Of a stretch of 64,000 bases of DNA, positions 55,223 to 57,628 are shown one piece after another. How positions within the stretch are numbered: position 1 is the first letter of the stretch; every line of letters begins with the position of its first letter. The DNA lies in IMG/VR virus record IMGVR_UViG_3300034072_000758, positions 62,001 to 126,000 of that record; one strand, 5' to 3'. Under the pieces are notes generated by a model, which did not search any database, had not been told where the DNA came from, and worked only from the letters and a program-made list of their open reading frames with translations. The position numbers and the translations under genes are program-made.

Positions 55223-55251
55223 TTGCGTTCGAAAAAGAGTGCCACTATAGT
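55223..55251 (+). promoter_or_regulatory. sigma70-type promoter TTGCGT-N17-TATAGT with upstream A/T tract
   Basis: Directly upstream of the tRNA/hairpin array. Confidence 0.7.
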
Positions 55252-55256
55252 ATGTA

Positions 55257-55289
55257 TATCGGAAGGCGGTAACGCTTCTTCGATAGCTA
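55257..55289 (+). ncRNA. Degenerate minihelix-like hairpin 0 (GTAA loop, 3' GCTA)
   Basis: TATCGGAAGGCG-GTAA-CGCTTCTTCGATA: 12 pairs with one bulge, followed by GCTA instead of NCCA. Confidence 0.45.
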
Positions 55290-55290
55290 A

Positions 55291-55363
55291 GGGCTTTTAG
55301 CTCAGTGGTTAGAGCGGGAGACTCTAAATCTCCGCGTCGTGGGTTCGAATCCCACATTGCCCG
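55291..55363 (+). tRNA. Amber suppressor tRNA, anticodon CTA (Lys(CTT)-like body); CCA not encoded
   Basis: D-arm GCTC-AGTGGTTA-GAGC; anticodon arm GGAGA-CT[CTA]AA-TCTCC (anticodon 55324-55326); T-arm GTGGG-TTCGAAT-CCCAC; acceptor GGGCTTT/ATTGCCC with two T-T mismatches; discriminator G. Confidence 0.85.
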
Positions 55364-55364
55364 C

Positions 55365-55399
55365 GTGGGGAGATTGTGGTAACGCAACTCCCCGCACCA
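55365..55399 (+). ncRNA. tRNA-minihelix-like hairpin 1 ending ACCA
   Basis: GTGGGGAG-A-TTGTG-GTAA-CGCAA-CTCCCCGC-ACCA: 13 pairs, 1 bulge, GNRA loop. Confidence 0.75.
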
Positions 55400-55406
55400 T
55401 ACTTAT

Positions 55407-55442
55407 GCTGAGGGGCGGGCGTAAGCCGGTCTCTCGGCACCA
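55407..55442 (+). ncRNA. tRNA-minihelix-like hairpin 2 ending ACCA
   Basis: GCTGAGGGGCGGGC-GTAA-GCCGGTCTCTCGGC-ACCA: 13 pairs plus one G.G mismatch, GNRA loop. Confidence 0.75.
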
Positions 55443-55459
55443 AGTATATCGTTCTCTAT

Positions 55460-55494
55460 GCGGATGGTTGGGGTAATCCCGGCCACCCGCGCCA
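55460..55494 (+). ncRNA. tRNA-minihelix-like hairpin 3 ending GCCA
   Basis: GCGGATGGTTGGG-GTAAT-CCCGGCCACCCGC-GCCA: 12 pairs plus one A.C mismatch. Confidence 0.75.
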
Positions 55495-55505
55495 GAGATT
55501 TTCAT

Positions 55506-55539
55506 GATGGGGGTAGGGTTAAACCTGCCCCTGTCGCCA
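55506..55539 (+). ncRNA. tRNA-minihelix-like hairpin 4 ending GCCA
   Basis: GATGGGGGTAGG-GTTAAA-CCTGCCCCTGTC-GCCA: 12 contiguous pairs. Confidence 0.75.
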
Positions 55540-55571
55540 AAAAGCACAATGGAGATTTTCTAGTGCGTTAG

Positions 55572-55961
55572 ATGCCTGAATGGTATATCCGTGGTAAGCA
55601 AGAAGCTGAACCACACACTTGGGTTTATGTGTTCGTCCGAACAGACATGCCCGTCCCCCAGATTGCCGTGCAATCGGGTCATGCCGCGCTTGAAGCCGGT
55701 CATGCGTTTGATAAGCCTTCCATCGACCCTTCGTCGCTGATTATTCTGGCTGTCAAGAATAAAGAACAACTCACCAAAGCTTTGGAACACGTCAAATCCC
55801 TTGGCCTGAGAACCGTCGAGTTCTTCGAGCCTGATTGGGATTATGGGTTCACTTCGTTCGCTACTGAACCGCTCCAAGAGGATCAGCGCCGTCTTCTGCG
55901 CAAGTATCAACTCTGGAAGGGCCAGTCTACGTTCGTTCCCGAACTCATTGCGGCGGAGTAA
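55572..55961 (+). CDS. Peptidyl-tRNA hydrolase II (Pth2)-like protein
   Basis: VYVFVRTDM, QIAVQSGHAALEA, LIILAVKNKEQL, FFEPD...TSFATEP: Pth2-fold motif order. Confidence 0.8.
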   Translation: MPEWYIRGKQEAEPHTWVYVFVRTDMPVPQIAVQSGHAALEAGHAFDKPSIDPSSLIILAVKNKEQLTKALEHVKSLGLRTVEFFEPDWDYGFTSFATEPLQEDQRRLLRKYQLWKGQSTFVPELIAAE

Positions 55962-55966
55962 AGCTC

Positions 55967-56368
55967 GTGTCCATCACCCTCACACAAGATCAAGCACAGG
56001 AAATCGTGGAGCAACTTGAATTGCTCCACGGCATTCACCCCCTGATCGATCTTCTCCAAAACAAAATCGACGGTAATCATACCGACGATGTTGGAGAGCG
56101 GCTGTCCCGATACCAAGCGGATCATTGGGAATTGGCCGAAGCGGTCGATAAGGTTTTTACGGCCTATATCGAGGTGTACGACATTCACCGAGCATATGGG
56201 ATTGAGCGTTGGGAAATCACGGACACTATTGAAATCCGTCAAGATACCTCGGCATGTTCCTGCTACAATTATGACATGCATTACCTGCCCGTCGAATGGC
56301 TGGAACTCGAAGGCGAAGCTCTTATCGCGGCTATCAAGAAAGCCAAAGCAGAAGGGAAGAAGTTCTAA
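55967..56368 (+). CDS. Hypothetical protein
   Basis: GTG start after GGAG; tight operon spacing. Confidence 0.6.
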   Translation: MSITLTQDQAQEIVEQLELLHGIHPLIDLLQNKIDGNHTDDVGERLSRYQADHWELAEAVDKVFTAYIEVYDIHRAYGIERWEITDTIEIRQDTSACSCYNYDMHYLPVEWLELEGEALIAAIKKAKAEGKKF

Positions 56369-56369
56369 A

Positions 56370-56636
56370 ATGTCTGGTTGGATTTTAGCGTCGGAAAGAC
56401 TTCCGACAAAAGAAGACCTCGGCGATTTCAGCATCGCTCAAGTCGTCCTCCAATGTAACGGGAAATTCGGTGACTTGAAAGCTATTCAACGTCTGGAATA
56501 TTCGTCATTGGTTTTCATCGGCGGTAACAAGGATCGTCCTATGTGGATGGACCCGGAGCGTAATCGCTTCCTCGAAAACTCGGCATGGTTCGTCTCACAT
56601 TGGCGTCCCATTGATCCTCTGCCTCAAGCTGTCTAA
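56370..56636 (+). CDS. DUF551-like small protein
   Basis: MSGWILASERLP...VSHWRPIDPLP. Start corrected from the ORF-track 56088. Confidence 0.65.
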   Translation: MSGWILASERLPTKEDLGDFSIAQVVLQCNGKFGDLKAIQRLEYSSLVFIGGNKDRPMWMDPERNRFLENSAWFVSHWRPIDPLPQAV

Positions 56637-56651
56637 CGAAAGAGCATTACA

Positions 56652-57209
56652 ATGAAAATCGCTGAACTCGAAGAAAAAATGTCGAACTGTTATCAATTCC
56701 AAGGCATCAACATGCTGGATCATGGTAAAATGGTTAATGAGGAATACCATAATCTCATCGAACAACTGAAAGGTGGACAAGAACACTACGATTTGCCTCC
56801 TTAGATGTATGAGCTTTTCACCAAGCTGCGTTCGTCTCTTCTCCCTGAGAAGATTATCGATACCTATCAGATTTATCATGATTGTGGTAAGCCGTTCTGT
56901 CTGGAAATCGATGAAAATGGCAAGCGTCACTATCCCGATCATGCCAACATTTCGGCAAATATCTGGCTGTCTCTGGAAGAAAAATCCAAGCACGATGACA
57001 TAATCGCCGATCTGATGCGTCATGATATGGACTTCCATACTTTGCGCGGCGACGAACTCACCGAACTCTGGAAGAACTATCTCGCTCCCACCCTGTACTT
57101 CACCGCATGGGCCGAACTGTTCGCAAACTCCAAAATGTTCGGTGGCACGGAAAGCGATAGTTTCAAGATCAAGAAGAAGCGCTTGATCCAAGCTGGTAAG
57201 AAACTCTAA
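56652..57209 (+). CDS. HD-domain phosphohydrolase-like protein interrupted by an in-frame TAG (56802-56804)
   Basis: 50 codons (MKIAELEEKMSNCYQFQGINMLDHGKMV...HYDLPP), then TAG, then ATG in the same frame. H (LDHG)...HD (YHDCGKP)...H (PDHA)...H (RHDMDFH) spans the stop. Confidence 0.7.
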
Positions 57210-57214
57210 GGAGA

Positions 57215-57595
57215 ATGGTGATGAAGATCACTCGTGGAAAAGTCATGCTGTTTGATCGACTGAAAGATCAACTCAAACAACACGTTAAAGAGGTCTATGA
57301 AGACTATGCCCGCGCATATCCAGAACACGCAGGTTGGGGAGTTGAAAGCTGGAACATCTACGGGTCTAACCTCAGTTTGACCTTGTGCTGGTCCCGACGC
57401 GGTTGTGTCAATCATGATAGTGTGAACATCCCGGTCGCTTGGATGTATATGTCCGAAGCCGAACGAAAAGAAGAAGTGGTTAGAATCAAGGCTGAAACCA
57501 AGATCAAGGAAGATGCCGAACAAGCCGCATTAGAAAAAGCCAGACTGGCTGCTGAACTGGCGGAGTTTAAAAGACTAAAAGAAAAATTCGGATAA
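57215..57595 (+). CDS. Hypothetical protein with C-terminal coiled coil
   Basis: AAGGAG RBS; last gene before the terminator. Confidence 0.65.
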   Translation: MVMKITRGKVMLFDRLKDQLKQHVKEVYEDYARAYPEHAGWGVESWNIYGSNLSLTLCWSRRGCVNHDSVNIPVAWMYMSEAERKEEVVRIKAETKIKEDAEQAALEKARLAAELAEFKRLKEKFG

Positions 57596-57601
57596 GTATT
57601 G

Positions 57602-57628
57602 AGCCTCCCCCTTCGGGGAGGTTTTTAT
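57602..57628 (+). terminator. Intrinsic terminator closing the tRNA-Pth2-HD operon
   Basis: CCTCCCC-CTTC-GGGGAGG-TTTTT. Confidence 0.8.

What the first reader, a model, noticed from the sequence alone, without database searches (positions are those of the whole stretch)
55223..57628. Putative tRNA-acceptor-end protection/rescue operon: minihelices + suppressor tRNA + Pth2-like + HD hydrolase
Seen: one promoter (TTGCGT-N17-TATAGT), the RNA array, then five tightly spaced genes (gaps of 1-15 nt) and a single terminator at 57602-57628, with no internal U-tailed terminator noticed. Established: Pth2 recycles peptidyl-tRNA, and HD-domain small alarmone hydrolases can remove pyrophosphate from toxSAS-modified tRNA 3' ends. 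Inference: the RNA and protein parts all concern the tRNA acceptor end and may form one counter-defence or translation-rescue module. Rnl1 (8520) elsewhere in the window would cover anticodon-cut repair.
Basis: inference. Interest (0 to 1): 0.8.

Follow-up and report, generated by a model that had tools for sequence, protein, structure and literature searches.

The report
Suppressor tRNA gating tRNA-end enzymes
A giant phage carries an operon in which an amber-suppressor tRNA lies just upstream of two tRNA-end enzymes whose own genes contain in-frame TAG stops. The same arrangement recurs in many unrelated jumbo phages and offers the client genes one jumbo-phage genome study searched for and could not find.

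Summary
One sigma-70-like promoter is followed by a leader hairpin, a tRNA with anticodon CUA, and four 12-14 bp hairpins each ending in RCCA. Five tightly packed genes and a strong terminator follow.

The Pth2-like gene starts GTG-CGT-TAG, and the HD gene has a TAG at codon 51.

In about 18 diverged phage lineages the Pth2-like gene (or its fusion) begins Met-X(0-4)-TAG, with A after the TAG in all but one checked gate. It sits next to the HD gene; the two are fused in some phages, in both orders. A tRNA-CUA usually lies within 0.1-3 kb. These two genes are therefore conserved clients of the phage's own suppressor.

Fold searches give a Pth2 fold, but the residue aligned to 24bt's Lys-Lys pair is Gln or His. 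The HD domain resembles that of CC-/A-adding tRNA nucleotidyltransferases, not a small alarmone hydrolase.

The minihelices look like ideal RNase P hairpin substrates, but every relative lacks them, including the closest.

Best reading: a suppression-coupled module acting on tRNA 3' ends. The gating is well supported. The enzymes' substrate and the minihelix role are inferred. I found no paper describing this.

The parts
55223..55251 (+). Sigma-70-like promoter TTGCGT-N17-TATAGT
   Evidence: Read. Below the threshold of the scan (-35 matches 3/6). L021 has TTGACA-N18-TATAGT at the equivalent place.
55257..55285 (+). 5' leader hairpin with GUAA loop and no CCA, at the predicted transcript start
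   Evidence: -12.8 kcal/mol, z = -3.1.
55291..55363 (+). Amber-suppressor tRNA: anticodon CUA, discriminator G, two U-U mismatches in the acceptor stem, no encoded CCA
   Evidence: ARAGORN; Rfam RF00005 63.4 bits, E 1e-12.
55365..55399 (+). Minihelix 1: 13 bp plus a bulge, GUAA loop, 3' ACCA. It starts one base after the tRNA discriminator.
   Evidence: -22.2 kcal/mol, z = -5.4.
55407..55442 (+). Minihelix 2: 13 bp plus a G-G mismatch, GUAA loop, 3' ACCA, U at -1
   Evidence: -26 kcal/mol, z = -5.7.
55460..55494 (+). Minihelix 3: 12 bp plus an A-C mismatch, 3' GCCA, U at -1
   Evidence: -20.1 kcal/mol.
55506..55539 (+). Minihelix 4: 12 bp, 3' GCCA, U at -1. It ends 11 nt before the Shine-Dalgarno sequence.
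   Evidence: -23 kcal/mol, z = -4.5.
55563..55961 (+). Pth2-fold gene. SD GGAG lies at 55551-55554, start GTG at 55563, then CGT, then in-frame TAG at 55569-55571, followed by ATG and 128 further codons.
   Evidence: Model pLDDT 88. The top 13 PDB fold matches are all Pth2. Pfam PTH2 E 2.7e-4, below the cut-off.
55967..56368 (+). Small gene of unknown function (phrog_26018-like), a paralogue of the last gene
   Evidence: A relative sits between the two enzyme genes in L021.
56370..56636 (+). DUF551-like small gene, absent from relatives
   Evidence: Pfam DUF551 E 1.7e-3, below the cut-off.
56652..57209 (+). HD-domain gene (phrog_14850), one gene interrupted by in-frame TAG at 56802-56804 after ...DLPP
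   Evidence: Both pieces hit phrog_14850 colinearly and map to residues 1-36 and 43-171 of the intact homologue P0010. HD motif residues are invariant. The fold matches the HD region of CC-/A-adding enzymes.
57215..57595 (+). Small gene of unknown function (phrog_26018-like)
57601..57632 (+). Intrinsic terminator: 10 bp GC-rich hairpin plus UUUUUAUU
   Evidence: -17.6 kcal/mol, z = -4.5.

Best explanation
This is an amber-gated translation module. One early-type transcript carries a UAG-suppressor tRNA and, downstream, two enzymes of the tRNA 3' end.

The ribosome can only make the Pth2-fold protein by reading a TAG at codon 3. It can only make a complete HD domain by reading a TAG at codon 51. 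The amount of both enzymes therefore follows the activity of the co-encoded suppressor relative to release factor 1.

Shown:
- the in-frame TAGs;
- their conservation in position class and in sequence context;
- the linkage of tRNA-CUA, the Pth2-like gene and the HD gene;
- the fusion of the two enzymes in some phages.

Inferred: the two proteins work together on the acceptor end of tRNA. The Pth2-fold protein would cleave an ester-linked peptidyl or aminoacyl group. The nucleotidyltransferase-type HD would remove a phosphate or nucleotidyl block. Either they recycle tRNAs trapped when the suppressor drives ribosomes past stop codons, or they trim the suppressor's own charged pool as a negative feedback. 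The amber gate makes their dose proportional to suppression.

The four RCCA minihelices are a lineage-specific insertion. Most likely RNase P and 3' trimming release them as 34-36 nt acceptor-arm mimics. Cutting at minihelix 1 would leave the tRNA with a one-base 3' trailer. What they do afterwards is unknown.
For: TAG gates:
- The Pth2-like gene has a TAG at codon 2-6 after a start codon, with an SD-like purine-rich motif upstream at the gates checked for one. This holds in the window and in fHe-Yen9-04, GAP32, XbC2, ME3, Arash, RsoM2USA, L009, L011, L015-L025, L029, L030 and L033. XacN1, CM1 and pT24 carry the same gate at the N-terminus of the fused protein.
- The preceding residues differ between lineages while the TAG stays.
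- The stop is always TAG, never TAA or TGA. The next base is A in 16 of 16 correctly anchored gates and in all but one of those added later.
- A pattern scan of 223 kb found 32 TAG gates against 12 TAA and 8 TGA.
- The HD gene has its own TAG at codon 3-4 in five lineages and at codon 47-51 in two. The latter fall in a variable linker.

Linkage:
- A tRNA-CUA lies within 0.1-3 kb in the window, L001-L004, L011, L021, L025, L026 and L029.
- The Pth2-like gene is followed by the HD gene, directly or after one variable ORF, in nearly every locus. Fusions exist in both orders.

Specificity and folds:
- No other real gene in the 64 kb window carries an in-frame TAG.
- Folds.
- Gene callers miss the Pth2-like gene or translate its TAG as Q under code 15. 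This may explain why the pattern is not annotated.
Against: - No expression, read-through or enzyme data exist.
- In the window and in XacN1 an ATG follows the TAG closely, so these two could also start by reinitiation.
- The Pth2-like family has Gln or His where 24bt has a Lys-Lys pair in the sequence alignment. From memory, the catalytic Lys of Pth2 lies in that loop. It may therefore bind rather than hydrolyse.
- A negative-feedback or clean-up role is only one of several that fit.
- Three lineages have the protein without a gate: RaK2, Hallingskeid and L026.
- Only 64 kb of a 517 kb genome was examined for other TAG-containing genes.
- Some relatives gate other genes too: an HNH endonuclease in L022 and two unknown ORFs in L020.
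Confidence: 0.55

Rival explanations
1. Counter-defence module. The minihelices would be decoys for host toxins that modify or cut the tRNA CCA end. The Pth2-like and HD enzymes would strip toxin-installed blocks (N-acetyl-aminoacyl, pyrophosphate, added nucleotides) from tRNAs.
For: Both enzymes belong to tRNA-3'-end families. The minihelices are good acceptor-arm mimics with encoded RCCA, whereas the phage's own tRNAs lack CCA. An Rnl1-type RNA ligase is in the window. From memory, Pth counteracts GNAT toxins and HD hydrolases reverse toxSAS; neither was tested here.
Against: - It does not explain why the genes carry conserved TAG gates or sit with a suppressor tRNA.
- A gate would delay a counter-measure that should act early.
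- The minihelices are missing from all relatives.
- There is no similarity to small alarmone hydrolases.
- The PADLOC defence-system library was not scanned, and no defence or anti-defence link appeared in any search made.
Confidence: 0.2
2. Neutral drift after the phage acquired a suppressor. Once a suppressor tRNA is present, in-frame TAGs are tolerated and accumulate at random. These would be first steps towards genome-wide recoding.
For: Borges et al. propose this path for recoded gut phages. A few other genes are gated in L020 and L022.
Against: - The same two genes carry the TAG in about 18 deeply diverged lineages.
- The TAG sits almost always at codons 2-6 and is followed by A. Drift would scatter TAGs over genes and positions.
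- No other gene in the window is affected.
Confidence: 0.08
3. The Met-X-TAG is a tiny upstream ORF. The enzyme gene is translated by termination-reinitiation, with no suppression involved.
For: The codon after the TAG is ATG in the window and ATT or ATC in about ten lineages. From memory, AUU can start translation at low efficiency.
Against: - In at least seven lineages the next codon is AAT or ACT, which cannot initiate.
- A coupling ORF could end in any stop, yet all end in TAG.
- Mid-gene TAGs split the HD domain, and the first metal-binding His lies upstream of them.
- A tRNA-CUA is co-located.
Confidence: 0.05
4. The two genes are decaying pseudogenes, or the TAGs are sequencing errors.
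For: Under the standard code both are interrupted.
Against: The pattern is conserved in cultured, independently sequenced phages and in metagenomes. The reading frames are intact beyond the TAG, with invariant catalytic-type residues.
Confidence: 0.02

Closest known systems
Stop-codon recoding in phages with phage-encoded suppressor tRNAs (code 15; Borges et al. preprint 10.1101/2021.08.26.457843, including the 'code change module' of Jade phages)
   Same: A phage-encoded suppressor tRNA allows translation of phage genes that carry in-frame stops. The stop acts as a post-transcriptional switch.
   Different: There, hundreds of TAG or TGA codons are spread over late, structural and lysis genes, and coding density collapses under the standard code. 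Here the genome reads normally under the standard code, and TAG is still used as a stop. The clients are two specific enzyme genes beside the tRNA, gated mostly at codons 2-6.
Autoregulatory recoding of release factor 2 (prfB in-frame UGA with +1 frameshift); from memory
   Same: An early in-frame stop in a translation-factor gene makes its own synthesis depend on the balance between termination and an alternative decoding event.
   Different: prfB uses frameshifting and senses its own product. Here read-through depends on a separate, co-transcribed tRNA. Whether the products feed back on that tRNA is not known.
Archaeal/eukaryotic peptidyl-tRNA hydrolase Pth2 (PF01981; PDB 3erj, 1xty, 1q7s)
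   Same: Same fold (TM 0.61-0.73, probability 1.0) and the same V-R-T-D-L ... Q..HAA N-terminal motif.
   Different: About 20% identity and below the Pfam cut-off. The loop holding 24bt's Lys-Lys pair is two residues shorter and has Gln or His there. A distinct EPDWDYG motif is present.
HD domain of class II tRNA nucleotidyltransferases (Aquifex CC-adding enzyme 3WFO-3WFR; A-/CC-adding enzymes of Deinococcus and Thermus), and more distantly the uridylyl-removing HD of GlnD
   Same: Best sequence-profile and fold matches. The ...HD(I/C)GKP... motif is shared. From memory, the E. coli CCA enzyme's HD has 2',3'-cyclic phosphodiesterase and phosphatase activity.
   Different: It is a stand-alone protein of about 180 aa without the nucleotidyltransferase head. 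About 22% identity. Below the Pfam HD cut-off in every member.
Hairpin-RCCA model substrates of bacterial RNase P, and the RNase P-processed C4 RNA of phages P1/P7; from memory
   Same: A 12-14 bp helix, G+1/C+72, U at -1 in three of four, and a 3' RCCA. That is the minimal substrate design.
   Different: Here four such hairpins are encoded in tandem between a tRNA and an mRNA in a natural phage operon. Cleavage was not tested.

Membership tests
tRNA (Rfam RF00005), amber suppressor | Cloverleaf scoring above the family threshold, with anticodon CUA | tested here: met
   63.4 bits against 29. ARAGORN gives anticodon cta. Two U-U mismatches in the acceptor stem and no encoded CCA.
Pth2 peptidyl-tRNA hydrolase (PF01981) | Pth2 alpha/beta fold | tested here: met
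   The top 13 Foldseek PDB hits are all Pth2, probability 1.0, TM 0.61-0.73. Model pLDDT 88.
Pth2 peptidyl-tRNA hydrolase (PF01981) | Score above the Pfam gathering cut-off | tested here: not met
   21.6 bits against a cut-off of 23. The profile against PDB gives E 0.0038 at best.
Pth2 peptidyl-tRNA hydrolase (PF01981) | Catalytic Lys in the loop after the first strand, and catalytic Asp (residue identities from memory) | tested here: inconclusive
   In the HMMER alignment, 24bt's Lys-Lys pair aligns to Gln, and family members have Gln or His there. Nearly invariant Asp residues exist in EPDWDYG, but no residue-level structural alignment was available.
Pth2 peptidyl-tRNA hydrolase (PF01981) | Hydrolysis of peptidyl-tRNA | not testable with these tools
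   Needs an enzyme assay.
HD-domain phosphohydrolase superfamily (PF01966) | H...HD...H...D metal-binding motif | tested here: met
   H15, H65-D66, H86, D111 and H115 are invariant in 42 homologues. In the window these are H24 of the first piece and H25-D26, H46, D74, H78 of the second.
HD-domain phosphohydrolase superfamily (PF01966) | Score above the Pfam gathering cut-off | tested here: not met
   17 of 42 members hit HD, best E 1.5e-4. P0010 scores 19.4 bits against 22. The window piece alone gives no hit.
Small alarmone hydrolase (RelA/SpoT-type HD) | Similarity to the Rel/SpoT/Mesh1 hydrolase domain | tested here: not met
   No such family or structure appears among the Pfam, PDB or Swiss-Prot model matches.
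Class II tRNA nucleotidyltransferase (CCA/CC/A-adding) | Polymerase-beta-type nucleotidyltransferase head domain | tested here: not met
   The protein is about 180 aa and aligns only to the region beginning about residue 260 of 3WFO-3WFR (sequence match 260-357). It shares only the HD part.
Genome-wide TAG recoding (genetic code 15) | Many genes fragmented by TAG under the standard code, with a gain in coding length when TAG is read as sense | tested here: not met
   Long ORFs are intact under code 11. Other TAG-joined frames are non-coding. TAG ends about 8 of 61 crude ORFs. Only 64 of 517 kb were seen.
Programmed stop-codon read-through by a dedicated suppressor tRNA | In-frame stop conserved among homologues, with intact coding sequence on both sides | tested here: met
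Programmed stop-codon read-through by a dedicated suppressor tRNA | Cognate suppressor tRNA encoded by the same genome | tested here: met
   A tRNA-CUA lies in the same operon here and near the genes in nine other loci. XacN1 has two copies elsewhere.
Programmed stop-codon read-through by a dedicated suppressor tRNA | Read-through protein detected | not testable with these tools
   Needs proteomics or a reporter.
RNase P minimal (hairpin) substrate | Coaxial helix of about 12 bp, G+1:C+72, 3' RCCA, preferably U at -1 | tested here: met
   All four have 12-14 stacked pairs, G1-C72 and A/G-CCA. Three have U at -1.
RNase P minimal (hairpin) substrate | Cleavage by RNase P | not testable with these tools
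   Needs an in vitro assay or 5'-end mapping.

The most novel reading that the evidence does not exclude
The amber-suppressor tRNAs carried by many standard-code jumbo phages belong to a self-contained translational circuit. Its conserved clients are a Pth2-fold protein and a nucleotidyltransferase-type HD protein. These act on tRNA 3' ends and feed back on, or clean up after, suppression. This particular phage has added a tandem array of RNase P-released acceptor-arm mimic RNAs to the same transcript, a class of phage small RNA I found no description of.
Probability: 0.35. Interest if true: 0.9.

Novelty: new variant of a known kind. Interest (0 to 1): 0.8.

Why it matters
Suppressor tRNAs are annotated in many cultured jumbo phages that use the standard code. 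Their purpose has been unclear. The XacN1 genome paper states that no target genes could be found (PMC5852040).

The conserved Met-X-TAG gates give concrete targets that can be tested directly in phages growing on laboratory hosts: GAP32, ME3, fHe-Yen9-04, Arash, XacN1, RsoM2USA and pT24.

The result also exposes a systematic annotation gap. The Pth2-like gene is missed, truncated, or translated with Q at the TAG in public databases.

If the enzymes regulate or service the suppressor, this would be a natural dose-controlled amber-suppression system, of interest for genetic-code engineering.

The RCCA minihelix array, if processed as predicted, would be a natural set of tRNA acceptor-arm mimics.

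Tried and rejected
- DNA similarity to known phages found only tRNA-level matches.
- The viral and metagenome scans found no close relative of the window phage apart from its own contig, IMGVR_UViG_3300034072_000758. The closest relatives came from the protein database instead (L021 and L029).
- Rfam gave nothing for the hairpins.
- A hairpin-NCCA scan of all fetched loci found no second array. One isolated T-arm-like hairpin-ACCA sits before a tRNA-Gly in phage Arash (L004 2747-2779).
- Other TAG-joined frames in the window (3198/3534, 23506/23830, 60865 and minus-strand cases) translate to non-protein-like sequence and were rejected.
- The ORFs lying between the two enzyme genes in relatives are unrelated to each other, except the phrog_26018-like one in L021.
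- The suppressor tRNAs of the different phages are too diverse to assign one amino-acid identity. G73 with G2-C71 and G3-C70 in the window's tRNA would fit glutamine, but that is only a guess.
None found a description of the gates, of the enzyme pair, or of minihelix arrays in phages.
- I did not scan whole genomes such as RsoM2USA for a distant tRNA-CUA.

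
Full report
**1. What is there**

The window comes from a 516,805 bp viral contig, IMGVR_UViG_3300034072_000758. On the + strand between 55223 and 57632 lie, in order:

- A promoter-like TTGCGT-N17-TATAGT. It matches -35 at 3/6 and -10 at 5/6, and the consensus scan does not call it.
- A 5' leader hairpin at 55257-55285.
- A tRNA with anticodon CUA at 55291-55363 (ARAGORN; Rfam 63.4 bits).
- Four hairpins of 12-14 stacked pairs, ending ACCA, ACCA, GCCA, GCCA (55365-55399, 55407-55442, 55460-55494, 55506-55539).
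- Five genes separated by 5, 1, 15 and 5 nt.
- A strong intrinsic terminator at 57601-57632, -17.6 kcal/mol, z = -4.5.

Among 36 stable hairpins on both strands of the window, only these four are followed by RCCA. The others are mostly terminators.

**2.

The Shine-Dalgarno GGAG at 55551 is spaced for a GTG at 55563, not for the ATG at 55572. The reading frame is GTG-CGT-TAG-ATG....

The 'HD' gene is one gene cut by a TAG at 56802. Both pieces hit the same PHROG family colinearly. They map to residues 1-36 and 43-171 of an intact homologue. The first metal-binding His lies upstream of the TAG.

Both enzyme genes therefore need the amber suppressor that is encoded just upstream on the same transcript.

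**3. The pattern is general**

Protein searches of the phage collection show the two genes side by side in about 29 jumbo phages. Read in frame, the Pth2-like gene begins as follows:

| Phage or locus | N-terminus |
|---|---|
| fHe-Yen9-04 | MSH-TAG |
| GAP32 | MAQ-TAG |
| XbC2, L009 | MAH-TAG |
| ME3 | MT-TAG |
| Arash, RsoM2USA, L025, L030 | ML-TAG |
| L011 | MRS-TAG |
| L015/L016 | M-TAG |
| L018/L019 | MTL-TAG |
| L020 | MKTL-TAG |
| L021 | MNTQR-TAG |
| L029 | MTKR-TAG |
| L022 | MN-TAG |
| L023 | MK-TAG |
| L024 | MNT-TAG |
| LR756511 | MTH-TAG |

- In XacN1 and CM1 the two proteins are fused as HD then Pth2. In pT24 they are fused as Pth2 then HD. All three fusions begin MK-TAG.
- Further fusions in both orders exist among 2,677 family clusters.
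- The HD gene has its own TAG at codon 3-4 in RsoM2USA, L011, L022, L023 and LR745206. It has one at codon 47-51 in the GAP32 group and in the window group. Elsewhere it has none.
- The stop is always TAG. The next base is A in 16 of 16 correctly anchored gates, and in all but one of those added later.
- The residues before the TAG vary, while the TAG persists across lineages sharing only 35-57% identity.
- A pattern scan of 223 kb found 32 TAG gates against 12 TAA and 8 TGA look-alikes.
- A tRNA-CUA lies within 0.1-3 kb in ten loci. In Arash it is annotated as tRNA-Phe.
- In the window the gates sit in a low-confidence N-terminal tail (pLDDT 52 for residues 1-10) and at the linker between the first two helices. 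Any inserted residue should be tolerated there. This fits the diversity of the suppressor tRNAs.

**4. Not genome-wide recoding**

Long ORFs are intact under the standard code. The other TAG-joined frames in the window are not coding. TAG still ends about 8 of 61 crude ORFs, including the Rnl1-type ligase.

**5. What the proteins are**

*Pth2-like protein.* The model (pLDDT 88) matches only Pth2 structures at the top of the list, with TM 0.61-0.73. However, the Pfam score is below the cut-off, and the position aligned to 24bt's Lys-Lys pair holds Gln or His. From memory, the catalytic Lys of Pth2 lies in that loop.

*HD protein.* The model has pLDDT 96. It carries an invariant H...HD...H...D...H motif. 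Its best matches are:

- the HD region of the Aquifex CC-adding enzyme (3WFO-3WFR; identity of 3WFR from PMC4810234);
- A-/CC-adding enzymes of Deinococcus and Thermus;
- the uridylyl-removing HD of GlnD.

Nothing resembles a small alarmone hydrolase.

Both proteins therefore belong to families that handle the tRNA 3' end. Their fusion argues that they act on one substrate.

**6. The minihelices**

- Each has G1-C72 and a purine discriminator followed by CCA. Three have U at -1. From memory, this is the design of a minimal RNase P substrate.
- Their length equals the acceptor plus T-arm stack of a tRNA.
- The phage's own tRNA-CUA and tRNA-Met lack an encoded CCA. The hairpins are thus not simple relics of phage tRNA genes.
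- Minihelix 1 starts one base after the tRNA discriminator, so an RNase P cut there would leave the tRNA with a single C.
- The closest relatives, L021 (67% identity) and L029, have tRNA-CUA, a gated Pth2-like gene and an HD gene with the same DLPP-TAG site, but no minihelices. No other locus has such an array.

They are a lineage-specific addition. Whether they serve as decoys, as ligands or substrates of the two enzymes, or only as processing and stability elements cannot be decided here.

**7. Most likely mechanism**

*Shown:* a suppressor tRNA and two tRNA-end enzyme genes form a conserved unit, and the enzymes' translation depends on reading TAG.

*Inferred:* enzyme dose tracks suppressor activity. 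The pair either recycles tRNAs trapped as peptidyl-tRNA when ribosomes read through stops, or limits the charged suppressor pool.

Several features favour programmed read-through, by published context effects that I recall but did not test:

- the early position of the gate;
- the A after the TAG;
- the Pro-Pro before the window's second TAG.

An Smr-domain gene upstream of the tRNA in L021 hints at ribosome rescue, but this is a single case.

**8. Rivals**

- The counter-defence reading explains the enzyme families and the minihelices. It does not explain the gates or the tRNA-CUA linkage.
- Neutral drift does not explain the same genes, the same position class and the same context recurring.
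- A reinitiation uORF fails where AAT or ACT follows the TAG and for the mid-gene TAGs. It also gives no reason for TAG only.
- Pseudogenisation is excluded by conservation.

**9. Novelty**

The XacN1 paper reports that no targets of its suppressor tRNAs could be found. Other genome papers only speculate. Borges et al. describe genome-wide recoding and a different 'code change module'. Six of my eight literature searches looked for prior descriptions and found none of these gates. The library does not cover all journals.

I class this as a new variant of a known kind, namely suppressor-dependent translation in phages. The RCCA minihelix array is an additional oddity that I found described nowhere.

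Noticed in passing
window 8520-9746 (+): The Rnl1-type RNA ligase is confirmed (Pfam RNA_lig_T4_1, E 8e-19). The gene ends in TAG, so the phage's own suppressor would extend it.
   Followed up: partly
L022 10396-10980: An HNH endonuclease gene in a relative begins ATG-TTT-TAG, the same kind of amber gate. Two unknown ORFs in L020 (977, 3015) are gated too. The device is not strictly limited to the enzyme pair.
   Followed up: partly
L019 1735-1811: ARAGORN reports a tRNA with a four-base anticodon 'ccta' (8-nt loop) about 2.2 kb upstream of a gated (MTL-TAG) Pth2-like gene. It may be an unusual suppressor.
   Followed up: no
L004 6301-6375 (Salmonella phage Arash, record 49176-49247): The record annotates this tRNA as tRNA-Phe, but ARAGORN gives anticodon CTA. 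The Pth2-like gene upstream is annotated only as a 50-aa 'peptidyl-tRNA hydrolase' fragment because of the TAG.
   Followed up: partly
L021 2800-3117: An Smr-domain gene lies just upstream of the tRNA-CUA operon in the closest relative. From memory, Smr proteins such as SmrB cut mRNA at collided ribosomes.
   Followed up: no
L026 4292-7445: A 325 kb contig with bacterial-type genes (MCP, GGDEF/EAL) carries a tRNA-CUA, an ungated Pth2-like gene and a long (322 aa) HD homologue. The trio exists without gates, possibly in a cell or a very large element.
   Followed up: no
protein database entries P0122-P0135: Many database versions of the Pth2-like protein start M-x-Q-I... The Q is a code-15 translation of the TAG. 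This was checked on L024 and L025, which do not translate to the stored protein under code 11.
   Followed up: yes
L004 2747-2779: Phage Arash has a single hairpin with a 7-nt T-loop-like loop ending ACCA, immediately before a tRNA-Gly. It is the only minihelix-like element seen outside the window.
   Followed up: no
window 52924-52996 and 53083-53604: A tRNA-Met without encoded CCA is followed by a DUF4326 gene (Pfam E 1.6e-24).
   Followed up: no
window 55967-56368 and 57215-57595: Two paralogous small genes (27% identity, both phrog_26018-like, with a Cys-containing motif) bracket the DUF551 and HD genes. A relative sits between the enzyme genes in L021. Function unknown.
   Followed up: partly
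window 57649-57685: A second, symmetric hairpin (-20 kcal/mol on both strands) lies just after the operon terminator, overlapping a promoter-like site for the next gene.
   Followed up: no
L003 1100-1762 (phage ME3): A tRNA nucleotidyltransferase gene lies 1.7 kb upstream of the tRNA-CUA / Pth2-like / HD cluster in ME3.
   Followed up: no
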